64,000 nt of DNA, taken from assembly GCF_963921235.1 (NCBI RefSeq), contig NC_086106.1, forward strand, positions 25,358,001 through 25,422,000, read 5' to 3'. Of the stretch, positions 1 to 61,956 are shown in pieces. The stretch's first letter is position 1; every line of letters begins with the position of its first letter. A program made the translations under genes and the position numbers. The notes under the pieces are model-generated. The model saw only the letters and a list, made by a program, of their open reading frames with translations, was not told the origin of the DNA and did no database searches. This DNA is from Mobula hypostoma. Its lineage: Eukaryota.

Positions 1-1094
1 GAAATAACGAAAATCATTTCGACGGAATGGTGTCGGAGGCCATGACCTTAGATATTGCACAGTTCAGCTGGCGGCTTCTTTTCAAACGTTTTGAGCCTCT
101 CATTGTTTTAATCTGATTCTCTCATCTGCCTTTAGAATGCAACCATCCGATCCGCACCTATGAAAAACATTGTAACACATGACCCCGAGAATTCATTCCG
201 ATCTGTACTGATGCACAATACAATGCTTTCCATATGGAAGCATTTTCTTGCCCCAGTCTACAAGAAGCTCCAGAGTAATGGACACAATTCAATGATTTCA
301 AACTCAAGGATTTCAAACAATGATAATGTCTATATTTTCGCCACCTGGGTAAAGCTTTCTGCAAAGGCAAACGCTGAAGATCCAGGGTAAAGGGCAGCAC
401 CTACCATGCCGACATATGCGCAATGATTTTTGAACATACATTGTTGTGACTTTGCACTTTTTCATCTACCTGCAGTGCACTTTGACTGCAGCTGCTACAT
501 TCTATTCTGCCTCTTTCCGTTTCGCTCTTTTTCCCTCTCCCTCTCACTGCTCCCGTCTACACAGCGTGAGAAAATGACAACAGTCATAGCAGCCGTAAAT
601 TACGTCACGTAACACGTAGTCCCTTTTTGAACATATCAACTTAAGTTATACGTATATGTCGTAACATCATTTAATGTAATGCATTCCCACTAGTCATGCA
701 CACAAAATACCCATTTACCCCCACTCTTTCCTTTCCTTTCCTGGTCCATAGACTCTAGCTCTATCTTTATTTTGATCACTTGCGTTTTGATGTGATGTCG
801 GATCCATTCTTGTCTTGACATGTACAGCTTCTGCATTTGCAAGTTCCTCCCTCATCTTCACTGTAAAAGCCTCTAAAATCTCTGGCAAAGTTTCAAAAAC
901 GATGCCCATCAAAAATATCAGGGAGGTACGGATTTGTAGATAAGCGGGGAAAATGGACTTTCACGCAGATCTTTTGCGAATACGTTTCGCATTCTTAAGT
1001 TGATCACGTGACCGTGGAGGATTTGTGTGTGAGTCCCTGGCAGTTTTCCGGCTAAGGACCCCCACTGGCGCGTGCTCATTGTATAACGGAGGTC

Positions 1095-1200
1095 CAATTT
1101 TGTGCGGATTGTCATCGCCTTCCAATACTGTGGGCTTTATGGCACAAAGATACACGGCAGAGTCCGACAAGAACTCCCGAAATCTTCAAATTACCTCTCA
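1095..1200 (-). pseudogene. 5'-truncated V fragment (family A FR3 end) with RSS CACAGTA-22-ACAAAATTG
   Basis: SDSAVYLCAIKP end; 2-nt deletion relative to the 3.5-kb V; 5' part replaced by a LINE fragment. Confidence 0.88.
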
Positions 1201-1640
1201 TATTGATAGAATCGACGAAAATATGCAACGACAAACAAACATCCAAAGAGCAAACGGCCGCAAATTATGCAAATACAAAACAAAAAAAAAAGATAATAAG
1301 TAAAAAAACTATGTCAAAAACTCTGAGAACAAGAGTTGCAGCGTCCTTGAAAGTGAATCCATGGGCTGTGGAAACATTTCATTGTTGGAGTGAGTGAAGT
1401 TATCTACTCTGGTTCAAGAAACTGTTGGGTGAGGGGAACAGCTGTTTCTGAATCTGAGTGGATCTAAGTCTCATGTGCCTCCTTCCTGATGGCAGTATGG
1501 AGAGGAGAGCATGATCTGAATAGTGGTAGTCCTTTATGATATAAGCTGCCTTCTTCCTTGTTCAATGGTCGGGAGAGCTTTACCTGTGATGAACTAGGCT
1601 GTATTCACAACTTCTTGTAGGCTTCAGGAATAACTTCTCT
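1200..1640 (-). mobile_element. Rex1/Babar-like LINE 3' fragment
   Basis: ggttcaaga...ctgtttctgaatctg...ccttcctgatggcag resembles the fish/shark Rex1 3' region (recognised by eye). Confidence 0.55.
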
Positions 1641-2273
1641 CGCTTGAGCAGCACACTTACAGCCGAACACATAGGCGTCTATGCTGACCCTCAGCAATTT
1701 GGTCGTGCATCGTTTCTACTTTCACTGCGACTTGTCCTGTACTGAGAGCCTACTCAGTTCAATTTGGATAATTTCACTTTCTACTTACCAGGATCCGTGA
1801 AATGTATTTTCCCCACAAGTTAATAAACCAAGGGTCAAATTCAATTTAAAATTGCGGACACCTGAAGGAGGAAGTATGGAACTACAGTCCAAACGACTCA
1901 GATGATCTGAAAATAGATATGGAAAGAAACAGTTTTCAAGCCTCTCATCTACACGTTATTTTGAAGTTGTTAAAGCTCACAAGCTCTCCGTCTACAGAGT
2001 GAATTTTAAATACCGAATACTTGTTCTGATGGCCAGTGGCGAACCAGGATGAGAAAATCTAGTTATGAGGGTGCCCTCAAGTCAATATAATGACAAAAGC
2101 ATTTTGTTACTGAAAGAAGTGCAACAGGGCACTCTTTTTCCGACTTCCTGAACGCGTTACAGAGATGTTTTGAGCAGCAGGAAGTTACAGTGTCAACACC
2201 CACCCTGACAACCTCATTGACACTGAAAACCGCAGGACCGGTTGTGAGTGTAATATTCGTCTCCAGGAGAGTG

Positions 2274-2614
2274 AACCAACACAAGTCATTTGGATAGGTT
2301 GGTGTCGTAGGCCATGAACTTAGATAATGCGCAGTTCAGCTGGCGGCTTCTTTTCAAACGCTTTGAGCCTCACATTGTTTTAACCTGATTCTCTCATCTG
2401 CCTTTAGAATACAACCATCCGATCCGCACCTATGAAACATATTGTAACGCATGACCCCGACAACTCATTCCGATTTGTACTTATGAATAATACAATGCTC
2501 TGTATATGGAGGCATTTTCTTGCCCCAGCCTGCAATAAACTTCAGAGTAGGACACAATTCAATGATTTCAAACTCAAGGATTTCAAACAATGATTATGTC
2601 TATATTTTCGCCAC
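2274..2614 (-). pseudogene. Putative fossil V of a divergent family (copy at 1-344)
   Basis: 85-87-nt GT-AG intron with the V-type acceptor tgtcc...tttattgcag; MSC...YVS*VR and ELRISK(V/F)MA.DT motifs; weak RSS-like CACTCTC-21-ACAACCGGT. Confidence 0.35.
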
Positions 2615-3494
2615 CTGGGTAAAGGTGTCAACAAAGGCAAACACTTCAACCACTTCTAATATTTTCTTTTCTGTTCCACTCATCGGGAAGAAGGTATAGG
2701 GTGAAGGGCAGCACCTACCATGCCGACATATTATTGCGCAATGTTTTTTTTTAATGTACATTGACCTTGTTGTGACTTTGCACTTTTACATCTACCTGCA
2801 GTGCGCTTTCTCTGCAGCAGTTACATTCTATTCTGCCTCCTTTCGGTTCCTTATGTTTCCCTCTCCCTCTCACTGCTCTTCTACACAGCGTGAGAAAATG
2901 ACGACCATAATAGGAACCGCGAATTATGTCACCTAACACGTCGTCCCTTAATGAACATATCGGCTGAAATTATCAGTAGATGTCGTAACATAATTTAATG
3001 TAGCGCATTCCCACTAGTCATGCATAGCGAATACCCATTTGTCCCACTCTTTGCTTTCCTCTCCTGGTCCCTAGAGTCTAGCGGAATCTTTATTTTGATC
3101 AGTTATGTTCTGATGTGATATCGGATCCATTGCTGTTTTGACATGTACAGTTTCTGCATTTGCAAGTTCTTCCCTCATCTTCACTGTAAGAGCCTCAAAC
3201 ATCTCGGCCAAAGTTGTCAAAAGCGATGTCCAGCAAAAATATCAGGGAAATATGGATTTGTACATAAACGGGGAAAATAGACTTTCATGTGTGGGAAATG
3301 TTTATTCACTTTTGAGTTTGTACAACCTGGTACACATTCACTTGACGGATAGTTCCTTAAACCTGCATATCTTTTGCGAATATATTTCTCATTCTTCAGT
3401 TGATCACGTGACCGTGGAGGATTTGTGTGTGAGTCGCTGGCAGCTTTCCGGCAAAGGGCCCCCACTAGCGGGCGCTCACTGTATTACTGAGGTC

Positions 3495-8707: not shown

Positions 8708-8860
8708 GGATTTTTTTTTCCAGATCCATCATCGCTCTGCCTTCAGAAGGGGTGTTAATGCAAAAATACACAGCGCAATCCAGCACAAAACCACCGGAGA
8801 TATTTTAGTGGTACTACTGGCCATTTGGTGTCCAAACCACTGGAAATCCAGACCGATTTA
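8708..8860 (-). pseudogene. Fossil family-A-like V 3' end (copies at about 18410-18560, 30770-30920 and 51120-51270)
   Basis: NISGGFVLDCAVYFCINT / NISSGFVPGSALYTCMIS; spacer end GGATCTGG-AAAAAATCC and downstream flank align with family A. Confidence 0.65.
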
Positions 8861-8980
8861 TTGTGCTTTTGAATATCGTTCTCTTAAGCCAAACACGTAA
8901 CTTTCGCAAAATCTGGGTGCGCCACTTCCGGTTTTCTCCCAAATGCCGCCTTCTAGCGGTGGTTCACTGCATTACACCTG

Positions 8981-11281: not shown

Positions 11282-11937
11282 CTGAATAGGATGGAATCGG
11301 AATTGGAAAGGTAGGCAACCTGCGACCAGATAGGGGACGGCTATCGGGACGCTGGGGGGATGGGTGTCGAAATCGGTTAGCAAGAGGAAATCGGAGTAGG
11401 AGTGGAAAGAAAATAACTCTAAGGGAGTTGGAGCAGTTTGGACAGGAAGGATTTTCTGAGAGGATTTACGTTGATCTGAAAGAGACACAGGGAACGGGAT
11501 TGCCGGAACATTTGAACATTGAGAAATAAAACTTAATAACGTAGTTTTGCAGGTGCAGTTCCTTCAGTTTGCATTTTGCCTCATCCTGTTGTTGGTGGAA
11601 GCCGACAAGGTCCGACTCTCCCTTCATATCAAACTGCTACCCTCGTCTGTGCATCTTTCGGTCTTCCTCCCCGTCGAGTTCGAAACTGTAAGGAAATAAA
11701 GAAAAGCAATAAGCAACGTCTTTTCTGAGCATAGGAGTCGGGTGTTCAATCTTTTATGCCCTAACGGTGTTATCTTCATAGGGCTCTGTCCTGGGAAGGT
11801 GTGAAGGTGCCTGAGTCTCGTGGCTGGGCCCACGTTTATGTAGAGGTTAGGCTGAGGCCACCCTCTGGTATCAGAGCTCACTGCAGTCAGGATATGATTT
11901 TTTTGTCCAGCTCCGCCTTCATCCCCAATTTCTGTTG

Positions 11938-13958: not shown

Positions 13959-13967
13959 TCACGTGAC
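13959..13967. promoter_or_regulatory. E-box TCACGTGAC of the RSS-distal module
   Basis: Also at 1004, 3404, 26221 and 46447; CACGTG/CACCTG at 18594, 19211, 30954, 35203, 39611, 51308, 51916, 54757 and 58543. Confidence 0.6.
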
Positions 13968-14010
13968 AGTGGTGCATATGAGTTTGCGCCCCTGCTGTTT
14001 TCCGGCAAAG

Positions 14011-14025
14011 TGCTCCCTCTAGCGA
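14011..14025 (-). promoter_or_regulatory. CTCF-like motif TCGCTAGAGGGAGCA, 23 bp past the RSS nonamer
   Basis: Matches the CCASYAGRKGGC core; TCGCTAGAGGGAGCC also at 26273-26287 and 46499-46513. Confidence 0.7.
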
Positions 14026-18298: not shown

Positions 18299-18645
18299 GG
18301 AATTACCCTCTCTTTCAAAATGCGTAAGTTTTAGCGGACTTTCAATTTATCAGAGTGCGGTGAGCCGCGGGCGGGCTCCCACCGTTCCATGAGCCCATTG
18401 TATGCAGGATCTGCTCTGTCCAGATCGACAATCGCACTGTATTACGGAGGACTGATCATGCAGGTATACAGAGCAGAACCCGGCACAAAACCACTGGAGA
18501 TATTTGAATCCAAGCAGCGGCCATTTCATGTCAAAACATCCTGAAATCTTCACCGATGTAATTTGCTAGTTAGGTTCGCTCTCAGAAGTCAACCACGTGA
18601 TTCTTACAAATATTTGGGTGCGCCACTTCGACTTTTCTCTCACGA

Positions 18646-18660
18646 CCTGCCCTCTAGCGA
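18646..18660 (-). promoter_or_regulatory. CTCF-like motif TCGCTAGAGGGCAGG without an intact V
   Basis: Homologs at 8945-8959, 31005-31019 and 51360-51374; E-box CACGTG 46 bp further. Confidence 0.65.
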
Positions 18661-19340
18661 CGGTTCACTGCATCACACCTCGCACAGACAGTATGTACTT
18701 TCAACATAAATTCACTTTGAACAATGACCATTTCTCACAGTCCGCGAATACAACAACAAAAGTGCAATTTGCATACTCTATCACTCTAAACATCCGCAGG
18801 ATCTGTCGCATTATCTGAATACTTAGTACAAATCATAATTAGCCACTACAACATCCTTAATTTCAGCAGCATGGCACTTGCTGTCTTTGTCAAACTAAAA
18901 ACAACGAATTTGCCCACGTTCTGTCTTCCCTTAGTGAACCACTACCCTACTTAAATACAAATGGTATATCGCAGGTCCACTCCGTCCTTATTAACTTCTC
19001 TATGCCGAAGCTCGAACAATGTGACCAAAGACGACGTTATACTACGTTGCCAATCGTGATATGCCGTTGCAGCAAAGAGGGTGGGTAAATGCTCATTGCT
19101 GTATCCAGGAAGTACATTATAAAGATCCAGTTTGGGTTTGCGTTGTAGTCATGAACCGTTCCATTACCTTCGCCGCCTTGTGTTGGTGATTGTAGCGTTC
19201 TTAAGTAGGGCACCTGACCACGGCTGATTTCAGTGCGCGCCCTACTTTTTTTCCCGGCAAAAGACGCCCTCCAGTGAGACCTTTTTGCATTATACAGAAA
19301 CAGTTTTTGTCCGGACCCGCCGCCTTCAGGCAACAGCGTG

Positions 19341-20105: not shown

Positions 20106-20299
20106 TCTCTCTGTCTCTTCTATCTATCTCCTCTCTCTTTTGCATGGAATCCCTGTGGATGCTCCTGACTGGCAAACATTATCTTCGCATAGATGTGTTC
20201 CTCCTCGTACGAAACTGTTACAAGGATTTCTGGGTGTGTTGTAGCTCGTGTCCCCCTGCCGCTTCACCCTCTTGCAGCCTCTGAGCAGGGAGGTTGCTT

Positions 20300-21275: not shown

Positions 21276-21950
21276 AAAATTCGCAACCAATCCTCTGTTA
21301 TCAATGTCTTGTTAGCTATTTCTTTCGCTTTCTCTTGCTCTTTATTTACACATCCTCCCTTTCCATTTCTCATGTTCTCTCCATACCCTACGTTCAATTT
21401 CACTTGCTTGCAATCTCTTTCCGCCCTGCCTCACCTTTCCTCTCTCTCTCATTCAACTGATTTCTCACTCGACCACTACACTTTTCACTCATTCACTTCT
21501 TTATTGCTCTCTGCACCGCCATCGATCATTTACATTCCTTGAATTTCTATCCCTTTTTTTCTCTAGGTCTCTCTCTCCCTCACTCCGCCATTTCCCCTCA
21601 ACTTCTACCACGTTATCCCCCTTTCTTAAAACCCAATCGAAACATAATATACATTATCCGTCTTCCTCTCCTCGGCGGTCAATAAGAAAGGATACGCCCC
21701 TGAAGACGGAAAGATATAGGAAAGTCTTTGCTTGGTGGTTGTGAACGGCGGTTGGTGAAGGTGTTGAATCAATTCTCGCTTTGACACTGAAGCCTTAAGT
21801 AGGCCTGTCCAGAGAGGGTACGTGTTTGCCAGTGTCCTCTGGATGGGCCTTTTTGAATGTTGCCGGTGAGGCCTAGGGCGTCCCCTAGAGCGAGACACCA
21901 GGGTGATTTTTTTGTTTGGTCCAATCCCGCCGTCACCTTGTAACACGATG

Positions 21951-24482: not shown

Positions 24483-26310
24483 CTGTAACCAACTCAAAGT
24501 TTGTGAGGGGGGCTGGATCCTTATGGGTTGTGATCAGAAACTGCAAGTGTTATGGACCCCTGCTGGAAGCTATAAATAAGCCTCCCGACAGTATCTAGAA
24601 TGAGGATTGCAGATTACAAAAGGAAATAGAAACGGCATTTTAAAAGGGTAAGGTTATGATAGTCATGGGGGATCTCAACATGCAGGTTGATTGGGAAAGT
24701 CAGGTCAGATATGCATCTCAAGAGAGTGAGTTTTTTGAATGCCTATGAAACGACATTTTAGAGTAGATTGCCCATCACCCTACAAAGCGATCAGTCGTAC
24801 AGGATTCGGTGTTGTGCAATGAACGGGAGATAATTAGTGACCTTAGGATAAAAGAACAATTTCAAGGCAGCGATCCCGATATGAATGAGGTCAACTTGAA
24901 ATTTGCAGTGAAAAAGCAAAGTTTGACGAAGCGATATTTCGGCACAGTAAAGGAAATTTCAGTGGTGAGAGAGGAGTTGGTCAACGGTTTCATAGTGGAG
25001 GACTTGGATGGACGAGCTGCAAAGGAAGACAACAGAACAGTAAAGGCGTGAATTTCTGGGGAAAGTTAGAAAGGTGTCCGATAGCTGTATCCAAAAATGA
25101 GGAAGTACGCAAATGGAAAGGTAGTGCACCCGTGGCTGACAAGGGGAGTCAAAGCTAATATAAAAACAAAAGAGCATGTATGCAACAAAGCAAAAGTTAG
25201 TAACAAGGCAGAGGATTAGGATGTTTTCAAAACCCTAAAGTACACCTGAAAGAATCATTAGGAGGAAAAAGATGATATATGAGCACAAGATGGCAAACAA
25301 TAACATAATGGATGGTAAAAGGTTATTTTCAGGAATGTTAAAAAAAAACAGTCAGATCAGAGTGCATATAGAAATCAAGAAAGTGGCGCCGAAGAAATAA
25401 TGGTGGAGGACAAGTTGATGGCAGATGAACGATTTCAGTATTTCGCATCAGGATTCACTGTGCAAGACCCGAGCATTGTGTCAGTCTTTGAAGGGTGCAA
25501 GGGAAGACATGCGAGTGCAATAACAGTTATAAGGGTGAATGTCCTCAAAACGCTGAAGGACAGAAGAGTACATAACTCAACAGAACCAGATGAACTACAA
25601 CCTGGTGGTAGCGGGAGACATTGCGGAGGCATTAGGAATAATTTTTCAAAATCATTGTCAATGATATAGGTGATGGAATAGATGGCTGTGTTGCCAAGTT
25701 TGGAGATGATACAAAGATTGATGGAAGGATAAGTCGTTCCTGGAGATGATTAGGAGAATGGGCAAGAGGGTGACAGACTAAGTACAACGTACCAAAATGC
25801 ATGTCATGCACATCGGTATAAGAATTAATGTGCAGACTATTTTGTAAGCGGGGAGAAAATGCATATTTTCGATGCAAAGAGACCTGGAGGATCGAAGTGC
25901 AGAAGACCCTGACGGTTAACTTGCAGGTAGAGTCGGTGGTGAGGAAGGCAAATAAAATGGTAGCATTCATTTCCAGAAGTCCAGAATACATGGGCACAGA
26001 TATAATGCAAATGATTTATAAGACACGTCAGGCCTCACCTTGAGCATTCTGAACAGTTTTGGGTTTCTATTCTAACAATGATGTGCTGGCCTTGAAAAGG
26101 CCTTGTAAATTCACAAGGACGACCCCGTCTGTCCCGCAAGCAAAGCAGCTGTCCAACTAACTGAAAAATGTAGTCAGTAATTTCTCCCCTTTCCCCTGGA
26201 GTTCCGCCTTCTTAAGTCAATCACGTGACAGTGGTGGATATGAGTTTGCGCCCCTGCTGTTTTCCGGCAAAGGGCTCCCTCTAGCGAGCGCTCACTGTAT
26301 CACGGAGGTC

Positions 26311-32446: not shown

Positions 32447-35255
32447 ACTCTCAATGTTGATCTCTCACTGGGTGTGATTACTGCCGGCTCCCGATTACTG
32501 TCGATTCGGGGATATCAGTACAAAAACAGAGCTTTTTAATGACTGTAACTTCGAAATAGCGACTGCTGTCTCCTCTCTCGTTTTTGAACCAGCCATATCA
32601 GTCTCTCATTTATTAGTGTGTGAGAGAGAGAATGCCTATGAAACGATGAAATGTTGCAGTAAACAATTAGCTTTTGTTGTACTGTAGGCCAATCCCGCTA
32701 TGTGTATCTGGTTGCTTCGATGGTGGTTGCTAGTGGAAGTGCTGATGCTTTATGCTAGAATAAGTGAGAGAGGTAGAATCTGTTCAGGTTAATGCTGCTT
32801 GCCGCAGATTCTACAAAGGATGTGGCAGAGGACGTTTAGGTTCTTAGCTTTTTTCTGATATTGATGTTTTGTGTTTTTCTTCTGTTTGAAAAATATCTGC
32901 GGAAACTATAAATATCAGATTGTGTATTGTGTACCTGCTCTGATTTTAAAAGAACCCATGGAAACAAGCTGGGTATTCTTTTCGCTGTACCCTGAAACAA
33001 CTGTCAATAACAAATATGTTATAAACTTAAACCAGTGTGATCTAACTGTGAGCATTTGCAAAGTGAAGGAGTATATCAGGCTGTCCATCATCAGTTCATA
33101 TAATATGGGTTGAGAAGGAAACTAGCGATGGTGGCGGACTGCAGAGTGCCTATCATGACCCCCTGGCGATATCTGGTGTCATGTCACTAGGCATTCGGAT
33201 CAATTCCGAACTTCGATGCTGTCAGCCGATACTTACGTCCTCAGTTTCCACGATTCCCGTGTTTTAATGTTTTCCACTGCCCGAAAATTACCCTCTGAGT
33301 AGCATGTGTTGGTGATCGGGGGATCACTGAATGCACATGTTAAGAGGAAATTGCGAAGTTGGACAGATAAATCAGTTGACAATAAGACCATATGATACAG
33401 GAACTAAATTAGGCGATTTTAACTGTCGAGTCAGCTCCGCCATTTCAGATGAGAAGGTGTGGTAATGGAATTATTCGATACACTAACCATATAATTAAAA
33501 TGAGATTTTCCAAAAGTCGAAATATACCTTTGGAAACAGATGCTATGAGTTTGCGCGCCTTTGACAGTAACCGGACGTTTTCACTGTTTGTCTCTTCCAT
33601 CTGTGGGAAAACACAAAATTCTAAAAGCAAGCTCCCATGAAACAACCATAGACTGTTCCCACTTACAAGAGTAGTAAACTGTAGGATGAAATTGAATCTT
33701 AATGTTGGTATGACCTTGCTCTTTATTTCCTGCCTGTGCTGAATTTTATTCGTCATTACACTTTATTTTTGTATCCTTTTTTTTTTACTTTGCAATACCT
33801 CGATAAGCTGTGTAGTGAATTCACCCGTATAAACAGAATCAATGCAATAATGCGACAATAATTAACACATTCCGTTTTCAGCTTAGATATGTAGCAAGCT
33901 GCTACACGTGATGATAACATCGGATCCGTTAAATCTGATTGGGAAACCGGATTATACAAGCAATCACTCTGTCGTGATCCTTTTCCCTCTCTCTTCCGTC
34001 TCTCTCTTTATACTGAAAATGCCTTCAAAATATGAATCTCGGTTACATATATGTACTTTAATCATAAATTTACTTCAATCATTGAACCTTTTTCTCACAG
34101 CTTGGGAATGCAACGACTAATATAGTTTTTGCATTCTCCAATACACTTAACATCCTCAGGTTCTGCCAAATTATCTAAATACCCAGTATAAATCATAAGT
34201 AGCAGTTGTAATTTCCTTAACTCAGTAGCATGCCACTTGCAATTATTTGTCAATTCGAAAACGACTAATTGTCACACCCTCTGTTTCCTTTAGTCAGCCA
34301 TTATGCCATTTAAATATATTAGATTATGAGATTAGATTATGACAACACTCAGCCCTCTTTTATTGTCATTTAGAAATGCACAAGAAATGATACAATGTTT
34401 CTCCGGAGTGACATCACAGAAAACAGGACAAACCAAAGACTAACACTACAGAACCACATAATTATAACATATAGTTACAGCAGTACAAAGCAATACCATA
34501 ATTTGATGAAGAACGAACCATGGGCAGGGTAAAAATAGTCTCAGAGTCCCTGAGTCGATCGACTCCCGAGTCCACGACAGTAGGCGGTAAAAGAGAGAAA
34601 CTCCCTGCCATAGACCTCCAGGCACGGTCAATTTGCCGATGCCTTGGAAGCAGCCGACCACAGTCGACACTGCATCCGTCCATCCGAAAAGGACGGGAAT
34701 CCGTCTAGCCACTCCGATACAGCCTCCCAAGTGCCATCCTCCGTCAAGCGCCTTCGACCTAGCCCCGGCCGCTGTAACAAGCAAAGCCGAGGATTCCTGG
34801 CCTTCTGCTCCGGGGATACCGGTTACCACACTGTAGCAGCGGCAGCGAAGCGGGAATTTCAGAGGTTTCCCAAATGTTCCTCCATACCTCACGTCCGTCT
34901 CCATCAAATCAGAATTGTGCACGGTCCCCTACTTGACAGATTACAGATATCATTCACCGGAGAGGACCCGGTTCCACTCCGTCCTCATTAATTCACAATG
35001 CAAATAATTGAACAAAGTGACCAAAGGCAATGTCAAACAAGGCTTCCAATCGTGAATGCCGTTGCAGCAAAGGAGCGTGGGTGATTGCACATTGCCGTAT
35101 CCCAGAAAGTTATAAAGCTCAGTTTCTTTCCGCGTTGTAATCAGGAACTGCTCCTTCAGCTTCGGCGCCTTCTGCTGCTGAATGCAGTGGTCTGAAGTAG
35201 GGCACGTGACTGTGACTGATTTCCGGGCGCGCCCTCTGCAGATTCCTCGGAAAAA

Positions 35256-35270
35256 GGCGCCCTCCAGTGA
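35256..35270 (-). promoter_or_regulatory. CTCF-like motif TCACTGGAGGGCGCC past the RSS
   Basis: Related motifs at 19263-19277, 31624-31638, 54810-54824 and 58596-58610. Confidence 0.7.
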
Positions 35271-38562: not shown

Positions 38563-39660
38563 GAAGGTTGCGGAAAATGTTTCAGAGCAGTTTTCAGAGG
38601 AGGTTACAGACGACGTACAGAAGTGGTAACTCACGGGGTTCTGAAGGGAATGGTCCATCCACTGTCACTGAGCCCCAGAGATATTTATGTTGCCAGCCGG
38701 AGATGAGAATCAGGTGCCTCAATTATGGCCCCCGATGTAACAAGAGGAAAACGAAATAACCGGAGTACCGAATCCACGGACCGGGCAGTGAACCGCAATG
38801 AGCACTTCACGGAGTGGACCGTCACATCCGTAAGTTGCTCTGCTAAATGGGAGCTGAACCGGGGAAGTCAGAATTGAGACTATTTAGACAGCGATCTGAA
38901 TGGAACTATGACACTGTCCACTTCTTAATAACTAACTCTGATTCTAATGTATTTGTCGATCTCATACTTCTGTCCTTCGTTGCACTTAATATAACACTTC
39001 ATTACCAGCAATGGATCGCCTTCCTTGGTCCGTCTTTCATGACTGTCTTAAATTTTCGTTGCCGTGGCACGCTATACCTGTCTCTGTAGTCCAATCTAGT
39101 CCTTTATTTGTCTACTCCATACCCCCGCCGTCCATCTATTTCTCTCTCTCTCTCTCTCTCTCATCTCGCTCCCTAGCGCTGTGGGAACATCCGTTCGCAA
39201 GCTGCCAGTTCACTCGGTATTCCGGTATTCATTGTCAATCTGAAAAAAAAGTCAATTGTTCTCCACTTTTAGGAAGCTAATGATAATAGAGTCCAACTGA
39301 TTTTTTTCTTCATCAGAGGGACTTACATGACAGCTTAGCCGATGCTGTCTAGTCACATGCACCCTCAACATCTCCAGATTGCACTCATGTTCACTGTTCA
39401 TCGCGCAAGCTCGTCACAAATTATGTCCGGCCAAATGTTAACCACACAATATTGTTATAGGCAACAGACACACAATATTGTTATGGACACTGAGATATAC
39501 TGAAAAATGTCTCGGAAAAATGCCACAGTAATATGAGGTAGAGCTGAATTCAAGAAGTGTTCTTCAATGTTTGGCGCAGTTTGCTGCTGAATGCGGCATT
39601 TGAAACCGAGCACGTGATCCTTATGCTTTGTGCGTGTGGCTGTTCCAGTCTCCCAGCTAA

Positions 39661-39675
39661 GGCGCCCTCTAGTGA
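39661..39675 (-). promoter_or_regulatory. CTCF-like motif TCACTAGAGGGCGCC
   Basis: Near-consensus; identical copy at 61891-61905. Confidence 0.75.
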
Positions 39676-44670: not shown

Positions 44671-46536
44671 CCGAAGTTTGTGAGAGGCGCCGGATCCTTA
44701 TGGGTTGAGTAAGAAACTGCAAGTGTTAAGGAATCCTGCTGGCAGCTATATACAAGCCTCCCGACAGTATGTGGAATGTGGGGCACAGATTACAGGAGGA
44801 AATGGAATAGGGATTTCAAAAGGGTAACGTTATGATAGTCATGGGGGATGTCAACATGCAGGTTGATTGGACAAGTCAGGTTAGATATGGATCTCAAGAG
44901 AGGGAGTTTATTGAATGCCTGTGAAACGACATTTTAGAGCAGATTGTCCATCACCCTACAAGGCGATCAGTTGTACAGGATTGCCTATTGTGCAATAAAC
45001 TGGATATAATTAGTGACCTGAGGATAAAACAACAATTTCAAGGCAGTGATCCAAATATGATTGATTTCAACTTGAAATTTGGCAGTGAGAAAGTAAAGTC
45101 TGACGAAGCAGCATTTCAGCACAGTAAAGGAAATTTCATATGTATGAGAGGGGAGTTGGTCAACGAATTCAGAAGGCAGGAATTGGAAGAACAGACTGCA
45201 AGGGTGGACAACAGACCAGTAAGGGCGTGAATTTCTGGGGAAAATGAGAAAGGTGCTCGATAGCAGTATCCAAAAATGAGGAAATACGCAAATGGAAAAG
45301 TAGTGCAACCGCGGATGACAAGGGGAGTCAAAGCTATTCTAAAAGCAAAAGAGCATGTATAAAACTAAGCAAAAATTTGTAGCACGACAGAGGATTAGGA
45401 AGCATTCAGAACCCTGGAGAAAAAACTAAAAGAATGATGAGGAGGTAAAAGATGGTATATGAACGCAAGCTAACAAACTATATCAAAGTGGATAAGAAAA
45501 GTTATTTATCAACAACGTAAAAAAAATAAAAGTGAGATGAGAGTGCATATAGAAAGCAAGAAAATGTAGACGAAGAAATAATGCTGGGGGACAAGTTGAT
45601 GGCAGATGGACGATATAAGTATTTCACATCAGGCTTCACTGTGGAAGACCTGATCAGCGGGTCAGACATTGAAAGGTGCAAAGGAAGACATCTGAGTGCA
45701 ATTACAGTTACAAGGGTGAATGCCCTTAAAACGCTGAATGACAGAAGAGTATATAAGTCATCCGAACCAGATGAACTGCACCCTTGCGCCCTGAAAGTGG
45801 TAGCGGTAGAGATTGTGGAGGCATTAAGAATGATTTTTTTCAAAATTATTGTCAATGATATAGATGATGGAATATATGGCTGTGTTGCCATGTTTGTAGA
45901 TGACACAATCACTGATGGAAGGATAAGTCGTTCTGAGGAAACATGCAGGCTACAGAAGGACAGAAAGATGAGGTGAATTGGCAAGGGAGTGGCAGACGAA
46001 GTAAAATGCACCAAAACCCATGTCATGTACAATGGTGTGAGAAATAAATATGCAGACTATTTTGTAAGCGGGTAAAAAATCCAAAAATCTCCGATAAAAA
46101 GAGACTTGGAGGATCCAAGTGCCGAACACGCAGACGGTTACCTTGCAGGTCAAAACGGCGGTGATAAAGAAAAATACAATGTTAGAATTCATTTCAAGAT
46201 GTGCAGAATAAATGGGCAGAGACGTAATGCAGAGGATTTATAGGACACGTGAGGCCCCTCACAGTGAGCATTCTGAACAGTTTTAGGTTCCTATTCTGAC
46301 AAAGATGTACTGGCATTGGAAAGGGTTCAGAGGACATTTACATGGATGACACAGTCAACCCGCAAGCAAAGCAGCTGTCCAACTAACTGAAAACTGTAGT
46401 CAGTAATTTTTCCCCTTTCCCCTGGAGTTTCGCCTGCTTAAGCCAATCACGTGACAGTGGTGGCTATGTGTTTGCGCCCCGGCTGTTTTCCGGCAAAGGG
46501 CTCCCTCTAGCGAGCGCTCACTGCATCACGGAGGAC

Positions 46537-49900: not shown

Positions 49901-52045
49901 GAGACAAATGACCAGAATGGGAAAGAGAGTGTAAATGAAATATAATGTTGGAAGATCCATGGTCATGCACTTAGTTGGAAGAAATAATTGTGTAGACTCA
50001 TTACTGAACGTGGACAAAAGCCAAAGCGCAGATGTGCAAAGTTGTAACACGGCTTGGTGGTCCTTGTGCAGAACACCCTAGAGATTAATTTACTCCCAGA
50101 GTCGGCGGTGAGGAAAACAAATACAGTGTTAGAACTCATTTCAGGGGCTGGAGAATACAAGAGTAGGGATGTGATGCTGACGCTTAAAGGCACTGGTTAG
50201 GCCCCACTTTCAGTATTGTGAACAGTTTTGGGCTCCACATTACAGAAAAAATCCGCTCGCATGTATGATTCCAGTAATGCAAGTGTTATCATACGAGGAA
50301 CGTTTGATATTTATGAGTCTGTATCCGTTGGCATTCAGAAGGATGAGGGGGATCTCACAGAATGTTTTCGAATATCGAACGTCCTCGACAGAGTAGATGT
50401 GTAAAGCATGTGGGGGATTCCAGGACAAGAGGGCATAGCCTCAGGGAAGACGACGTCACCTTAATACAGAAATGCGGAGAGACTCCATCTGCGACAGTGT
50501 GGTGAATGTGTTGCATTTATTTGCACGGGCAGCTGTGGAGGACGGGTGGTTGGGTATACTTAAGGCAGAGGATGATATGTTTTCAACTGGCCACGGTATC
50601 AAAGGTTCCAAAAGGAAGGCCGGGAGTGGGGCTGAGGAAGGGCCAATCGATCAGCCATGATTTAATAGCGGAGCAGATTCGATGGGCCAAATGCCCTAAT
50701 TCTTCTGCTATGTTTTATGGTCTTGTGGTGTTACCATCTCTTTCAAAATGGGCAAGCTTTAGCAGACTTTCAATTCTTCGCCCTCGACCCTTCTCGCGCG
50801 TTCTTCCTCTTGCTGTATCCTTACCAGGATACGTCTCCTTTCCCTGTTTGTCTCCGTTAATCACTCTTATCACTCTTCTCCTTATCGACCATTCTCTGAG
50901 CCCAGCTCTTTCCGTTTCGCTTTTTCCCTCCCGTGACGAAACTGCTACTCGTGGTTGTGGGTGTATTGTAGCTCTTGTCGCCCTGCCCCTTCACCCCCTT
51001 GTAGCCTCTGAGAAGGGAGGTTGTGTTGTCTCATGGTTCCTGAGGGCGGTGAGTTGTTCGATGTTGAGCAGGATGCGGTGGGCCGCGGGCGCCCTTCATT
51101 CCATTCGCACATTTTACGCCGGATCTGTTTTGTCCAGATCGGTAATCGCACTGCATTAGGACGGGCTAATCATGCAAATATACATAGTGGAACCCGGCAC
51201 AAAACTACTGAAGAGATTTGAATCCAAACAGCAGCCATTTCATGTCCAAACAACCGGAAATCTTCACCGATGTAGTTTGCTACTGAGTTTCGCTCTCATA
51301 AGTCAACCACGTGATTCTTTCAAATATTTGGGTGCGCCACTTCGACTTTTCTAGCAGGACCCGCCCTCTAGCGACGGTTCACTGCATCACACCTCGCACA
51401 TACCGTATGTAGTTTAAACATAAATGCACTTTGGAAAAATGATGATTTCTCACAGCCCTGTAATGCAACGACCAAAATACTATATGCATTCTCCATCACG
51501 CTAAGCATCCGCAGGGTCTGTCGCATTATCTAAATACTCACTATAAATCATAAGCTGCCACTGTAACAGTCTTAATTTCAGCAGCATGTCACCTGCTGTT
51601 CTTTGTCTAACTAAAAACAACGATTTCCCCACACTCTGTTTTCCCTTAGTGGACTATTGCCCTACTTAAATATATTGCAGTTCCACTCCGTCCTTATTAC
51701 TCCTTCATGTAGAACCTCGAACAATGTGGCCAAAGACGACGTCATACTAGGTTGTCAGTCGCGATATGCCGTTGCAGCAAAGAGGGTGGGTGAATGCACA
51801 TTGCCGTATCCCGGAAATACATTATAAAGATCCAGTCTGGGTGTGCGCTGCAGTCATGAACTGTTCCATTACCTTCGGCGCCTTGTGTTGGTGATTGCAG
51901 CCATCTTATGTAGGGCACGTGACCACGCCTGTTATCAGTGTGTGCACTCCCAATTTACCGGCAAAAGACGCTGTCCAGTGAGAGCTTTTTACTTTATACA
52001 GAACAAATTTTTGTTCGAGACCCGCCGTCTTCATGCAACAGGTAG

Positions 52046-53642: not shown

Positions 53643-54863
53643 CGTACATTGAATAAAGTAACCAGAGAATGATTTGAAGATATTTCTCCGATAAAAAGAG
53701 AAGTTATTCAAGTAAGGACAAGCAGAGACTTTCCGGGCAACCCGGCGCTTTCATTTAAAAGTATATGTGCATTTTACTTCTAAATACAGGGTTGATGCCA
53801 ACCACAGGACGGTCTGGCGTTAATTCACTCATTTCTCCCCACACCGCTCCCCACCCCCTTCGTCTCCAGCACCGTCTGACTTCTCTCTCTCTCTGTCTCT
53901 TTGTCTCAGTCCATCACTTTTGACTCCGCATCTCCGATTATCCTCCGAATCGTCTCCCTCCGTATCTCTCTCACTCACACACACTTTCAAGTGGATCTGA
54001 AGGTGTTTATTTTTGCATTCTTTTAGTGTTTCACATTGTACTACCTCGATAAGCTGTTTAATTAATGCATCTGTTAAATCCCAGTCAATGCAATCATCCG
54101 ACAAGAATAAAAAAGCATATCCAGTAAAATGTCCCTCGTGGTGATAACATCAGATCTGTCAAATCTGTTTGGGAAACCAGATTATACAAGCTATCACTCT
54201 GTTGTGCTCCCATTCCCTCTCTCCCTCTCTCGCTCTCTTTTCTACTGAAAATGGCTGCAGAATATAAGTGTATGGGTAGTATGCGGTCAAGTGTATGTAC
54301 TTTAATCATAAAGTTTTTTTGAACTTGTACCTCTTACGCTGTCACGCTAAACATTGGCAGGTTCTGTCGTATTATTTAAATACTCAGCATAAATCAATGT
54401 CGCTTTTGCAACATCCTTAATATCGGCAGCATGCCACTTGTAAATCTTTGTCAATCCGAAGACCATTATTTTTCCCACCTGTGTTTTCCGTTTGTCAGCA
54501 ATTGTCCTATTTAAATATATCCCGCTTCCTTTCTCATTATTTCTCGCTGCAGACACCAGAACAAAGTGTCCATAGACAAGGTCACGCAGTGTTGTCAATC
54601 GTGGTATGCAATTGCAGCAAACGAGGTTGCGTAAAAGAACATTGCAGTACCCCGGAAATGCATTTTAAAGTTCCAGTTTAGTTGCGCATTGCAATCAGGA
54701 ACTGCTCCTTTAGATTCGGCGCCTTCCGCTGCTGATTTCAGCGCTCTTGAGTAGGGCACCTGACCATGGCTGAGTTCTATGTGAGACCCTTCCATTTTTC
54801 CGGAAAAAAGGCGCCCTCCATTGCGAGCCTTTTTTTTTTCCATTATACAGAACCAGTTTTATA

Positions 54864-57500: not shown

Positions 57501-58661
57501 ATCAACAGTAATCAGTTGTTCTCTCTATGTGTCTCTTCCATCGTAGGGAAAACACTAAACTGGAAAAGCAGGTTTCAGTGTGCACAAGTATACATTCTAC
57601 CCGATTATAAGAGTATGGAAATGTGGAATAAAATTGAATATCAATCCCAATCCACCAGGGTCTGATCGTGTTCTTTATTTGCTGGCTGTGCAGCATTTTT
57701 ATACGTCTGTTGCACTTTTTTTTATATTGTTTTATTATTTTACTTTGAACTACCGCGATAAGCAGTGCAGTGAATTCATCTGCAATAACCGAATCGATGC
57801 AATCATGCAACAATAATAAACACATTCCGTTCGCAATCTAGGTACATATATCAAAATACTCAATGTGGTGATTACAGCGTATCCGTTAGATCGGGTTGGG
57901 AGCCAGATTATACGAGTTATCTCTCTGTTGTGATCCCATTCCCTCTCTTCCTCGCTCGCTCTTTCATACTGAATGTGCCTTCAAAATATGAGTCATCCGA
58001 CCGCATAGATGCCTATATTTATTTTAACCATAAAGTTACTTTCAACACCGAACCTCTTTCGCACAGCACGGGAATACAGCGACGATAATAGTCTCTGCAT
58101 TCTCTATCACGCTGAACATACGCAGGTTCTGTCGGATTATCTAAATTCTCAGTATAAACCATGAGTAGCTGTTGGGTCTTCCATAATTTCAGTGGGTTGT
58201 TAATTTCTGGGTTTCGTTAGCATGCCACTTGCAATTCTTTGTCATTCAGAAAAGCACCGATTTTGCCACCCTCTGTTTTCCATTGACCACTTTAAATATA
58301 CCCCGGTTCGACTCCGTCCCTATTATGTTTCCTTGCAAACAAACGAAAAAAATGGCCAAAGACAATGTCAGTCAAGACTGTCCATCGTTATATACCCTTA
58401 GAGTAAAAGAAGAAGGTCGAATGCACATTGTGTTATTCAGGAAATGAATTGCAAATTTCCAGTTCGGTTTCGCCTTGTAATCAGAAACTGTTCCTTCAGC
58501 TTCGGCGCCTTGTGCTGCTGCTTACAGCGCTCTTCCGCAGGGCACGTGACCATGGATGATTTCCGGGTGCGCCCCTTCCAGATTCGCCGAGAACAGGTGC
58601 CCTCCTGTGAGAGCATTTTGCACCATACATGACTAGTTTTTTGTCCGGACCCGCCGCCTGC

Positions 58662-59084: not shown

Positions 59085-59799
59085 GGTGTCTAATTTCTGG
59101 CTGAATAGAATGGCAAATGCCTTCCAGGACGCAATTATCACTCAATAGATATTGCGGTGTGAGGTCTTTACAGCGATACCTTTCATCTTATGTAAGAGCG
59201 GGTGCTCTTTCCTGGTTAAATAATTGGCTGACACAATAAACCAAGGCTTACTAAGCACCAATCACAATCTGTTTTTTATCATATGTCATTCTGCCTGTTT
59301 CTCCGCTATTTCAATGCCACGCGTTCCAATCTGTCTCTCTCTCTCTCCCTCTCCCTCCCTCTCTCTCTCTCTCTCTCTCTCTTCCTCTGTCCTACTGACT
59401 TTGTTACCCTGTTATCTGCATAATCACAACATATTCAAAAACTTATCAAAGTGTAATCAAACTCCGTTAAGCATTTTCCACATGGTCGTTTCTTCGACAT
59501 TGACAATATCCTGCTGGAAGTAGTTCATTTATTTATTTCTTTGTTTAGTTAGTTATTTGGTGATATATCCCACAATAGTCCCATAGGTCAACATTTTTCA
59601 ATCTTCTGGCATTGAACTAGTTAATCAATGTCAGCAAGTGTAGACAATGAAATCAGTAAGGATCAAGGCCGCACATGGTGTCTGCTTTCCCGCACGGTCT
59701 TAAGCAGATACCAAGAAGCTAATACCACAGATTTGCGAGAATTATGTCAGATCCACTGCACCCCTCACTTCGTGGAAAACCTGCGTAATTTGCTCTTCC

Positions 59800-60900
59800 A
59801 ACTGGGCGTGAATGGAACTAATACACTCCCGGCTTATTTATCAGTCACTCACTTTCATTCAGGTGCCTTGCCGGTCGGCGTGGGCGATCATGTGTCTCCA
59901 TCCATCACGGTCCCTGACCCTCCGAATTGTAATTGTTGCCTGCCCTGTTTCTAACCATGATGTTATTCCATCTATCATTTTCATTCTCTGTCTCGCTCTG
60001 CTTCTTTTTCCTCCAGTTTTCCAGTTGTAACTAAATGTTCTAATGTCTCTGTTCGGATGATGTGTCCAAAGAATTTTGATTGTTGTTTTCTGATTTGTTT
60101 TAAATATGTACGCTTTCTTTTCGTTCTCTGTATTACTTCTTCGTTGGTTATTCTGTCCGTATATGATATGCATATCATTCTTCTGAGGAACCACATCTCT
60201 GCTAAATTGATTCTATTTCCCATTGCAGTAATGAAGGCCCATGACTCGAAACTATACATCAATATAGGAAGCATTTAGCAGCTAAGAGGTTTAAGGCGGA
60301 TGTCAATTGTTATTTTCTTGTTCGTTAGGATGTTTCTGATTTCTGTAAATGCTGTTCTTGCCATTGCTATTCTTGCTTTTATGTCTGTTTCGCATTTGCC
60401 GTCAGATGTTATTCATGATCAAAGGTACTTGAAGTTGTGAACATGTTTCAGGATTTTATTTCCCAACACGATCCTACAGTTTGGGATATCAGTTTTATTT
60501 ATATTACCATTACTTCAGTTTTCTTTTTGTTTAAGGTTCGTCCAAGTCTTTCGCTGTCTGTGTTGAAAGTAGATCATTCACTCTAACTATATTCTGTTTG
60601 TCAATCTCACTTTTCCCTTTTTCGTTCTACTTTAATAAACACTTCATTTCTTGCAATGAATCTCCGTCTTTGTTCCCTATTTTGTTACTGACCTATATTT
60701 CCGTCGCTATGTCAAGCAATGGCTCCCAGTCTGCCTCTGTATTCCAATTTTACTGAAACATCAATGCAGCTTTAAACTTGTTATGGAAACTTCTTTTCAT
60801 CCAACGCCAGTCCATTCGGTATTAATTTGCAATTCGTAAAATAAACATCAATTTATCTGAACTTTTAGGACGCTAATGTCAATAGACACCACCTGCAATT
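59800..60900 (-). mobile_element. RTE-clade LINE fragment
   Basis: LPILMYSFESW...EMWFLRRM..ISYTDRITNEEV...FFGHIIR. Confidence 0.88.
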
Positions 60901-60984
60901 TATCTCCATCAGAAGCATTCGATGTGACAGCATGCCGAATGCTATCTAATTATATACAATCTCAGTATCACTAGGTTGCACTCA

Positions 60985-61640
60985 ACTTCACTGTTAATCA
61001 TAGCAAGAGGATACGAGTACAGGAGCAGGAAGGTAATACTGCAGTTATACAAGGCCTTGATGAGACCTCACCTGGAGTATTGTATGCAGTTTTGGTCCCC
61101 TATTCTGAGGAAAGACATGCTTGCCATAGAGGGAGTGCAGAGAAGGTTCACCAGATTGATTCCTGGGATGGCAGTACTGTCATAAGATGAAAGACTGGAT
61201 CGACTAGGCTTATACTCGTTGGAATTTAGAAGATCGAGGGGGGATCTTATTGAAACGTATAACATTCTAAAGGGATTGGGCAAGCAAGATGCAGGAAGAT
61301 TGGTCCCGATGTTGGGGAAGTCCAGACCGAGGGGTCAGATTTGAGAATAAAGGGGAAGCCTTTTTAGGACCGAGGTGAGGAAAAAGTTCTTCACACAGAG
61401 AGTTGTAAATCTGTAGAATTCCCTGCCACAGGAAACAGTTGAGGCCAGTTTATTGGCTATATTTAAGAGGGAGTTAGATGTGGCCCTTGTGGCTAAACGG
61501 ATCGGGGGTATGGTGAGGAGGCAGGTACAGGGTTCTGAGTTGGACGATCAGCCATGATCATATTGAATGCTGCTGCAGGCTCGAAGGGCCGAATAGCCTA
61601 CTCCTGCAGCTATTTTCTATGTTTTTATGTTTATGTTTAA
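60985..61640 (+). mobile_element. CR1 LINE 3' fragment
   Basis: YRSRKVILQLYKALMRPHLEYCMQFWSP and a tttatg tail. Confidence 0.92.
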
Positions 61641-61956
61641 TCCCTCGAGGTAGTGAAAAATGAAGTCTAGCAAAAAAAATTACCACGAGATATTCTTAGA
61701 GCCAACAGAGCGACATGGACACCACCATATAGTAGAAATGCTTCAGAAAGCCGCCACAGTATCCCTAGGTAAATCTAAATTCAAGCGGCGTTCCACAAGT
61801 TTGTCATATTTTGTTGCTGAATGCGGCATTTCAAATCGACCGCGTGATTTTCTGCTTTCTGCGTACAGCTGTTCCAGTTCCCCAACAAAAGGCGCCCTCT
61901 AGTGATCACGCAACGCTGGACTTTGTACAGACCCGCTGTTTCCCTACAACACTGAG

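What the first reader, a model, noticed from the sequence alone, without database searches (positions are those of the whole stretch)
1004..61926. RSS-distal CTCF + E-box module on nearly every V segment
Seen in sequence: 12-27 bp past the RSS nonamer lies a CTCF-like 15-mer, always pointing in the direction of V transcription. Examples are TCGCTAGAGGGAGC at 14011, 26273 and 46499; TCACTGGAGGGCG at 19263, 31624 and 35256; TCACTAGAGGGCGCC at 39661 and 61891; weaker copies at 1057, 3457, 11856, 21877, 54810 and 58596. An E-box (TCACGTGAC, CACGTG or CACCTG) follows 44-47 bp further. Motifs and spacing hold across families A, B and C although the surrounding flanks differ. Established: CTCF elements just downstream of the RSS of proximal mouse Igh VH genes promote their use during cohesin/RAG scanning, whereas mouse Tcra/d V CTCF sites are mainly promoter-associated. 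Inference: this shark/ray TCR locus uses an Igh-like RSS-coupled loop-extrusion anchor with a bHLH partner, possibly an ancestral design.
Basis: partly seen in the sequence, partly recalled or inferred. Interest (0 to 1): 0.85.

Follow-up and report, generated by a model that had tools for sequence, protein, structure and literature searches.

The report
CTCF-type site beside ray TCR V-gene signals
Nearly every T-cell-receptor V gene segment in this ray DNA carries, just past its recombination signal, a kept CTCF-type docking motif pointing the same way as the gene, plus a USF-type E-box, an arrangement known from mouse antibody heavy-chain genes but, as far as my searches went, not reported for a fish T-cell-receptor locus.

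Summary
All 14 cited motif positions are right. The motif core starts 60-63 bp after the heptamer, about 23 bp past the nonamer. An E-box follows 44-49 bp later. I found five more copies: V3, V15 and three relic V ends.

Three corrections:
- The flanks of families A, B and C are homologous for 150-230 bp, so this is shared ancestry, not convergence.
- The fit to CTCF is uneven: 17.4 bits in family C, 8.8-10.6 in family A, mostly below 7 in family B. V2's copy fits better on the opposite strand.
- The E-box is GTCACGTG, the USF/TFE type rather than the E2A type. It is absent from the skate copies.

Selection is supported. The E-box is the least-changed non-coding 8-mer in the window's V units. 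Across 13 deep lineages from three species, the CTCF core is the most conserved 14-mer after the V end. Little skate V segments carry 17-bit sites at the same spot. A horn-shark read-through hints at one. Two bamboo-shark V segments lack it.

Best reading: an Igh-like, RSS-coupled CTCF element. Occupancy and function are untested, and "ancestral design" is not shown. Earlier notes of this scan (s1-141836, s1-141898, s1-142306) report the same motif elsewhere in this genome.

The parts
1005..1071 (-). V1 (family A, truncated V): CTCF-like core 1057-1071 (5.3 bits) and GTCACGTG E-box 1005-1010
3405..3471 (-). V2 (family A, intact V): core 3457-3471. It scores 6.5 bits on the sense strand but 14.1 bits on the plus strand (3459-3477), an inverted site. 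E-box 3405-3410
8894..8959 (-). V3 (pseudogene with the RSS deleted): core 8945-8959 (15.8 bits), ACCGGAAGT box, E-box decayed to TACGTG at 8894-8899.
11857..11871 (-). V4 (family D pseudogene): weak core ATACCAGAGGGTGGC (7.0 bits), no E-box. Its copy V8 near 24135 has decayed (0.2 bits)
13960..14025 (-). V5 (family A, intact): core 14011-14025 (8.8 bits), E-box 13960-13965
18594..18660 (-). Relic V 3' end about 620 bp downstream of V6: RSS decayed, core 18646-18660 (9.9 bits), CACGTG 18594-18599
19211..19277 (-). V6 (family B, frameshifted): core 19263-19277 (TCACTGGAGGGCGTC, 3.2 bits), E-box changed to CAGGTG at 19211-19216
21877..21891 (-). V7 (family E pseudogene): core GCTCTAGGGGACGCC (9.0 bits), no E-box at the module spacing
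26222..26287 (-). V9 (family A, intact): core 26273-26287 (10.6 bits), E-box 26222-26227
30954..31019 (-). Relic V 3' end downstream of V10: core 31005-31019 (14.8 bits), CACGTG 30954-30959
31569..31638 (-). V10 (family B, stop codons): core 31624-31638 (5.1 bits), E-box decayed to CACGGG
35163..35270 (-). V11 (family B, intact): core 35256-35270 (9.1 bits), two further sense-strand CTCF-like hits at 35227-35245 (10.5) and 35163-35181 (14.6), E-box 35203-35208
39611..39675 (-). V12 (family C pseudogene, nonamer region deleted): core 39661-39675 (17.4 bits), E-box 39611-39616, a second CACGTG at 39677 abutting the core
46448..46513 (-). V14 (family A, intact with in-frame deletions): core 46499-46513 (10.6 bits), E-box 46448-46453
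51308..51374 (-). Relic V 3' end downstream of V15: core 51360-51374 (10.7 bits), CACGTG 51308-51313
51916..51981 (-). V15 (chimeric C/B pseudogene): decayed core 51967-51981 (TCACTGGACAGCGTC), intact GTCACGTG 51916-51921.
54717..54824 (-). V16 (family B pseudogene): core 54810-54824 (4.7 bits), E-box changed to CAGGTG at 54757-54762, further sense CTCF-like hit at 54717-54735 (10.2 bits)
58543..58610 (-). V17 (family B, heptamer deleted): core 58596-58610 (6.8 bits), E-box 58543-58548
61841..61905 (-). V18 (family C pseudogene): core 61891-61905 (17.4 bits), E-box decayed to CACGCG

Best explanation
The block is a conserved CTCF-type binding element inside a 130-190 bp homologous flank that follows the 23-RSS of TCR alpha/delta-like V segments in this ray. 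Its core starts about 23 bp past the nonamer and reads in the V-sense direction. If these V segments join by deletion, that direction points to the D/J/C side.

Most likely it works like the RSS-proximal CTCF elements of mouse Igh proximal VH genes. Bound CTCF would stall cohesin that reels V-region chromatin past a RAG-loaded recombination centre, so the adjacent RSS dwells there and is used. In this species a USF/TFE-class E-box (GTCACGTG) 45 bp further on, and in some families a CCGGAA box, probably help keep the spot open or act as a barrier.

Shown here: sequence, position, orientation and conservation above the neighbouring flank. Inferred: CTCF binding, cohesin stalling and any effect on V use.
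For: **Position and orientation.**
- The core starts +60..63 after the heptamer in all intact RSS copies.
- 23 of 25 matrix hits of 9 bits or more lie on the V-sense strand.

**Conservation inside the window.**
- Between families the core 14-mer is 65-82% identical. The intron is 51-62%, third codon positions 52-63% and the inter-motif flank 42-51%.
- On a tree of 13 units the core takes 1.29 changes per site, against 1.97 for the intron. GTCACGTG takes 0.62, the least-changed non-coding 8-mer (1 of 246 windows).

**Conservation across lineages.**
- Across 13 deep lineages from three species, the core is the most conserved 14-mer from the V end to +200 (1 of 192 windows; 1.71 against 3.26 changes per site).
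- Column conservation tracks the information content of the CTCF matrix (rho 0.67, p 0.002). The lineage consensus TCACTAGAGGGCGCC is itself a 17-bit match.

**Kept where the RSS is lost.** V3 and three relic V ends have lost their RSS but keep 9.9-15.8-bit cores.

**Other species.**
- Three little-skate V segments have 16.9-17.4-bit sense sites 55-67 bp after the heptamer.
- One Logan contig has 18.3- and 14.5-bit sites at +61 and +89.
- A horn-shark V read-through encodes SAEGAL at the residue offset where that Logan contig encodes SADGAL from its CTCF core.

**Not a dispersed repeat.** The module occurs only beside V segments, and no RNA family matches.

**Known precedent.** Mouse Igh has CTCF sites within 100 bp of the RSS, all pointing to D-J-C (PMC5859386).
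Against: - Many copies fit the matrix poorly. Family B has G at the near-invariant A of the core and scores 3-9 bits. All copies have T where the matrix strongly prefers C at position 4.
- The best copies (17.4 and 15.8 bits) sit beside pseudogenes. Intact V segments have only 6.5-10.6 bits.
- V2's copy is inverted.
- Inside the window the core is only moderately special (18th of 246 non-coding windows).
- Introns also align between families and with skate at about 67%. Slow neutral decay in this genome could therefore explain part of the conservation.
- Two bamboo-shark V segments lack the site.
- There are no binding, cohesin, Hi-C or repertoire data, and no D/J/C-side partner sites could be examined.
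Confidence: 0.5

Rival explanations
1. Duplication legacy. The motif, its spacing and the E-box are inherited from one ancestral V unit and persist because this genome evolves slowly. They have no present function.
For: - The whole flank is homologous across families A, B and C.
- Introns and promoter regions also align at 58-68% between families and with skate.
- Many copies have drifted to poor matrix scores, one is inverted, and V8 and V15 have lost the core.
- Within the window the core ranks only 18th of 246 windows.
Against: - The core is the single most conserved 14-mer across 13 deep lineages and three species, ahead of the nonamer.
- Conservation per column follows the CTCF matrix.
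- GTCACGTG changes three times less than the intron.
- Cores survive where the RSS and V body have decayed.
Confidence: 0.2
2. RSS-flanking accessibility element of the V8E kind. The 130-190 bp flank is a small enhancer or germline (possibly antisense) promoter driven mainly by USF/TFE and ETS-type factors that opens chromatin at the RSS. The CTCF-like stretch is accessory or is bound by another zinc-finger protein.
For: - The E-box is the most conserved element in this window.
- CCGGAA or ACCGGAAGT boxes lie between the two motifs in family A, V3 and V16.
- The module has 53% G+C against 43% around it.
- Mouse VH8 genes carry a conserved ~200 bp open-chromatin element immediately 3' of the RSS that promotes recombination (PMC10390877).
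Against: - The E-box and the GGAA box are not kept in skate, L005 or families D and E, whereas the CTCF core is.
- CpG observed/expected in the module is not raised (0.74 against 0.71).
- No transcript evidence is available.
Confidence: 0.2
3. Compound insulator between V units, like chicken beta-globin HS4. There a CTCF site blocks enhancers and a USF site recruits activating histone marks as a barrier (that description is from my own knowledge). Here the pair would keep each V unit's chromatin state separate, without a direct role in RAG scanning.
For: - A CTCF-type core and a USF-type CACGTG are paired at fixed 44-49 bp spacing in 12 or more modules.
- Modules persist at relic sites with no usable RSS.
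Against: - The fixed distance to the RSS and the co-orientation with V in three species are not required by a pure boundary role.
- The USF half is missing in skate and L005.
Confidence: 0.1

Closest known systems
RSS-proximal CTCF-binding elements of mouse Igh proximal and middle VH families (7183, Q52, S107 and others)
   Same: A CTCF-type motif lies within 100 bp of the V 23-RSS on the non-coding side, on nearly every member. All copies are co-oriented with V, which means toward D-J-C in Igh (PMC5859386 Table 2 and orientation section; PMC7930373).
   Different: - The locus here is TCR alpha/delta-like, in a ray. In mouse Tcra/d the sites are mostly upstream of V promoters.
- Many copies here are weak matches.
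- A USF-type E-box accompanies the site in this species.
- Occupancy and effect on V use are unknown.
V8E elements downstream of mouse VH8 genes (part of the PAIR regulatory modules)
   Same: A conserved ~200 bp block lies immediately 3' of the RSS, shared by a set of V genes. In mouse it is linked to open chromatin and higher recombination (PMC10390877).
   Different: - V8E is defined by open chromatin in pro-B cells. That paper names Pax5, E2A, YY1 and CTCF as binding the neighbouring PAIR elements, not V8E itself.
- V8E is restricted to one VH family.
- Here the block spans several V families, and its deepest-conserved part is the CTCF core.
Chicken beta-globin 5'HS4 insulator (CTCF site plus USF site)
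   Same: It combines a CTCF-type site with a USF-class CACGTG box in one short element. This comparison rests on my own knowledge, not on a tool result.
   Different: No boundary or barrier activity was tested here. The USF half is not conserved outside this species' A, B, C and relic lineages.

Membership tests
V-RSS-associated CTCF-binding element (Igh VH-CBE type) | Sequence matches the CTCF core motif | tested here: inconclusive
   - Scores are 17.4 bits (V12, V18), 15.8 (V3), 9.9-14.8 (relics), 8.8-10.6 (V5, V9, V14, V7, V11) and 7.0 or less in eight others.
- The lineage consensus is a 17-bit match, and conservation follows the matrix.
V-RSS-associated CTCF-binding element (Igh VH-CBE type) | Lies within about 100 bp of the V RSS, on the side excised at joining | tested here: met
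   The core starts 60-63 bp after the heptamer start, about 23 bp past the nonamer. The offset is the same in skate and L005.
V-RSS-associated CTCF-binding element (Igh VH-CBE type) | All sites share one orientation, pointing to the D-J-C end | tested here: inconclusive
   Sites are co-oriented with V in every copy except V2, which is inverted at 14.1 bits. The D/J/C region is outside the window, so the direction toward it is assumed from deletional geometry.
V-RSS-associated CTCF-binding element (Igh VH-CBE type) | Bound by CTCF and cohesin in the rearranging lineage | not testable with these tools
   No chromatin data are available. A literature search found no paper on CTCF at shark or ray TCR loci.
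V-RSS-associated CTCF-binding element (Igh VH-CBE type) | Convergent partner sites near the recombination centre | not tested
   This lies outside the 64-kb window. Only two plus-strand hits of 9 bits or more exist in the window.
Two-part CTCF site (core plus upstream motif bound by zinc fingers 9-11) | A CTGCAGTTCC-like motif upstream of the core, at canonical spacing (about 8 nt to CCA in the IL3 site) | tested here: not met
   A TGCAGTGA block is present in V3, V4, V14, the relics and one skate V. It ends only 3-5 nt before the core, 3-5 nt closer than in the IL3 example. Families B and C lack it.
USF/TFE-class E-box | Palindromic CACGTG with GT or T on the 5' flank | tested here: met
   (G/A)TCACGTG is found in 12 of 20 modules. 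More than half of the 21 CACGTG in the window lie in modules. Which protein binds is not testable here.
V8E-type RSS-flanking enhancer | Open chromatin and enhancer marks immediately 3' of the RSS | not testable with these tools
   Only sequence conservation of a 130-190 bp flank is shown.

The most novel reading that the evidence does not exclude
RSS-coupled, V-co-oriented CTCF elements are an old feature of elasmobranch, or even jawed-vertebrate, translocon antigen-receptor loci. On this reading, cohesin-driven RAG scanning with V-side anchors predates the shark-ray split. Mammalian Igh retains the layout, while tetrapod Tcra/d moved its sites to V promoters.
Probability: 0.15. Interest if true: 0.8.

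Novelty: new member of a known kind. Interest (0 to 1): 0.5.

Why it matters
CTCF sites next to the RSS are central to the current model of how RAG scans mouse Igh, but how old that design is remains unknown. This window shows the same layout at a TCR alpha/delta-like V array in a ray. The sites sit at a fixed offset, share the V orientation, are conserved above the local background and recur in a skate.

That gives a concrete target set for CTCF/RAD21 profiling, Hi-C and repertoire sequencing in elasmobranch thymus. The window offers natural variants for relating motif strength to V use:
- strong copies (V12, V18);
- medium copies (family A);
- weak copies (family B);
- an inverted copy (V2);
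- copies with the RSS lost (V3 and the relics).

The outcome would say whether loop-extrusion-guided V choice is ancient or arose more than once.

Tried and rejected
- **Convergence across unrelated flanks.** Rejected: the flanks align across families.
- **Dispersed repeat or SINE carrying a CTCF site.** Rejected: the module is found only beside V segments, and there is no Rfam match.
- **CpG-island-like protection of the module.** Not seen: observed/expected is 0.74 against 0.71 for the window. Only G+C is higher.
- **Canonical CTCF upstream motif.** A TGCAGTGA block exists, but its spacing is 3-5 nt too short.
- **E2A-type E-box.** Only V6 and V16 have CAGGTG. The conserved form is CACGTG.
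- **Better motifs beside functional V segments.** Not seen: the best scores are beside pseudogenes.
- **Wider species sampling.**
  - The word-indexed protein search found nothing useful.
  - Three look-ups had no record.
  - Three more hit chromosome-scale assemblies whose DNA the tool could not deliver, two from horn shark (GCA_036365525.1) and one from GCA_963921235.1.
  - L004 is too short and of unknown origin.

Full report
**What is in the window.** Translated searches find about 18 V segments, all on the minus strand. They have 23-bp-spacer RSSs, and their best matches among solved structures are TCR alpha chains.
- By sequence they fall into families A (V1, V2, V5, V9, V14), B (V6, V10, V11, V15, V16, V17), C (V12, V18) and D (V4, V8). 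V7, V3 and a fragment V13 stand alone.
- Only V2, V5, V9, V14 and V11 look intact. The rest have stops, frameshifts, truncations or damaged RSSs.
- Earlier notes of this scan call the genome a ray, and one calls it a devil ray. I did not check the species.

**The observation.**
- Where the RSS is intact, the 15-mer begins 60-63 bp after the first base of the heptamer, about 23 bp past the nonamer.
- An E-box follows 44-49 bp after it. CACGTG is perfect in 12 of 20 modules.
- V6 and V16 have CAGGTG. V10, V18 and V3 are one base off. Families D and E have none at that spacing.
The relics align to the end of a V, a decayed RSS and the module.

- As a control, the same matrix finds 15-23-bit sense-strand sites 700-1200 bp upstream of V segments in a tetrapod-like TRA-type locus (L001), the promoter-side layout known from mouse Tcra/d. 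It finds none after their RSSs.
- The window has 25 hits of 9 bits or more, against about 8 expected from independent-base and first-order Markov models. 23 are on the V-sense strand.
- At the homologous site the scores are: 17.4 (V12, V18); 10.6 (V9, V14); 9.1 (V11); 9.0 (V7); 8.8 (V5); 7.0 (V4); 6.8 (V17); 6.5 (V2); 5.3 (V1); 5.1 (V10); 4.7 (V16); 3.2 (V6); and nothing for V8 and V15. V3 scores 15.8 and the relics 9.9-14.8.
- V2 fits better on the opposite strand (14.1 bits).
- Six of 16 flanks reach 9 bits, against 1.3% of random windows, though the copies are not independent.
- Family B has further sense-strand CTCF-like hits 30-90 bp downstream (35227, 35163, 54717).

**Ancestry or selection.**
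- Units of families A, B and C align from about -476 (promoter and leader) through the intron, V exon and RSS to +150, and to +230 for B against C. Motif and spacing are therefore inherited.
- The question is whether they change more slowly than neutral neighbours. They do.

| Region, between families | Identity |
|---|---|
| Intron | 51-62% |
| Third codon positions | 52-63% |
| Flank between the two motifs | 42-51% |
| CTCF core 14-mer | 65-82% |
| GTCACGTG | 76-94% |

| Region, changes per site on a 13-unit tree | Changes per site | Rank among non-coding windows |
|---|---|---|
| Intron | 1.97 | – |
| V exon | 1.99 | – |
| CTCF core | 1.29 | 18th of 246 |
| E-box | 0.62 | 1st of 246 (2nd of 682 overall) |

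- Inside this window the E-box is the outstanding element, and the CTCF core is only moderately special.

**Other species.** Proteins related to V11 led to DNA from several assemblies.
- *Little skate* (GCA_028641065.1; species confirmed). Three V segments have sense sites of 17.4, 16.9 and 17.4 bits, 55-67 bp after the heptamer. None has CACGTG.
- *A Logan contig from run SRR17051963* (species unknown). It has an 18.3-bit site at +61 and a 14.5-bit site at +89.
- *Horn shark* (GCF_036365525.1). A gene model reads through the RSS and encodes SAEGAL at the residue offset where the Logan contig encodes SADGAL from its CTCF core. This is an indirect hint only, because no DNA could be fetched.
- *Brownbanded bamboo shark* (GCA_003427335.1). 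Two V segments have no such site within 320 bp.
- *A teleost-like locus* (L006). One of about 14 V segments has a hit.

I aligned ten lineages of this window with two skate V segments and the Logan V.
- The CTCF core is the most conserved 14-mer between the V end and +200 (1st of 192 windows; 1.71 against 3.26 changes per site).
- Per-column conservation follows the information content of the matrix (rho 0.67, p 0.002).
- The consensus TCACTAGAGGGCGCC is itself a strong match, apart from T at matrix position 4.
- The E-box is not kept outside this window's A, B, C and relic lineages.
- One caveat: skate and ray introns also align at about 67%. Neutral decay is slow in this group, so cross-species presence alone proves little. 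The excess over the neighbouring columns is what counts.

**What the E-box is.** The conserved form is (G/A)TCACGTG, the class bound by USF, TFE/MITF and MYC/MAX. E2A and HEB prefer CAGSTG. That assignment is from my own knowledge. More than half of all 21 CACGTG hexamers in the window sit in modules. A CCGGAA box, which is ACCGGAAGT in V3, lies between the two motifs in family A, V3 and V16, but not in C or most of B.

**Other checks.**
- The module occurs only beside V segments.
- No RNA family matches.
- CpG observed/expected is ordinary, though G+C is higher.
- A TGCAGTGA block 5' of the core resembles the CTCF upstream motif. It ends 3-5 nt before the core, whereas the IL3 insulator example has 8 nt. 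I do not count it as a canonical two-part site.

**Assembly gaps.** None touches a V exon or a module.
- The flanks of 30258-30494 and 62576-62753 map collinearly onto paralogous units.
- The two sides of 10427-10584 map 2.4 kb apart in the paralogous stretch, which there holds an RT-like ORF and V7. Continuity is not shown, and one V could be hidden.
- I did not fill any gap.

**Comparison with what is known.**
[quoted passage not shown] In Tcra/d many sites lie upstream of V promoters and orientations are mixed (PMC5859386; PMC7930373).
- Mouse VH8 genes carry a conserved ~200 bp open-chromatin element immediately 3' of the RSS that promotes recombination (PMC10390877).
- The ray module resembles the first in motif, place and orientation, and the second in being a longer conserved flank.
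- A full-text search found no paper on CTCF at shark or ray TCR loci.
- Earlier notes of this scan report the same kind of motif 561 kb upstream (s1-141836, followed up, which claims sharks have it too), 438 kb downstream (s1-141898) and 21 kb downstream (s1-142306) in the same genome. The finding is therefore locus-wide and not new to the scan.

**Verdict.** Three parts of the interpretation are overstated:
- its uniformity across the V segments;
- the 'bHLH partner' as a general feature;
- the 'ancestral design'.

Binding and function remain to be tested.

Noticed in passing
window 18540-18800, 30900-31160, 51255-51515 (minus strand): Three relic V 3' ends lie about 620 bp downstream of V6, V10 and V15. 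The end of FR3 is still recognisable and the RSS is gone, but the CTCF-like core (9.9-14.8 bits) and CACGTG are kept.
   Followed up: partly
window 8745-9281 (minus strand): V3 is a composite pseudogene. A V body loses its last codons and its whole RSS by deletion and runs straight into a 15.8-bit CTCF core and an ACCGGAAGT box. A second partial V end follows at 8745-8846.
   Followed up: partly
window 14166-14184, 26428-26446, 46654-46672, 19419-19437, 31774-31792 (minus strand): The FR3 codons for F/L-T-A-G/S-W-Q-R/K form a sense-strand CTCF-like match (8.3-12.6 bits) inside the V exon of families A and B. This may be a by-product of the coding sequence.
   Followed up: no
window 51948-52366 (minus strand): V15 is chimeric. 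Its 5' part groups with family C, and its 3' end and flank group with family B, with a duplicated FR3 stretch. This suggests unequal recombination between V units.
   Followed up: partly
window 58636-58675 (minus strand): V17 has an intact reading frame but lacks the RSS heptamer in the alignment with its relatives.
   Followed up: partly
window 12282-12300 and 24551-24569 (minus strand): Family D units (V4, V8) carry a sense-strand CTCF-like hit (10.3 and 11.4 bits) just upstream of the V exon, on the leader or intron side rather than the RSS side.
   Followed up: no
window 38380-38520 (minus strand): A tandem run of cagtgacctc-like units is followed by AAGATGGCAGCG and GCGCGTGCGC, which look like YY1- and NRF1-type boxes. 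This may be the promoter of a repeat element.
   Followed up: no
window 20717-21403 and 59859-60274 (minus strand): Long ORFs that look like retrotransposon remains lie between V units. A 0.6-kb repeat at 60998-61632 matches little-skate DNA at 72-88% identity.
   Followed up: no
window 10427-10584: The two sides of this assembly gap match points 2.4 kb apart in the paralogous stretch 20298-23538, which there holds an RT-like ORF and V7. A V7-like segment may be missing from the assembly here.
   Followed up: partly
L001 (GCA_029204185.1), 7952, 9810, 15669, 23658, 27253, 30437: In a tetrapod-like TRA-type V array, strong sense-strand CTCF matches (15-23 bits) lie 700-1200 bp upstream of V exons and none after the RSS. 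This served as a control for the matrix.
   Followed up: partly
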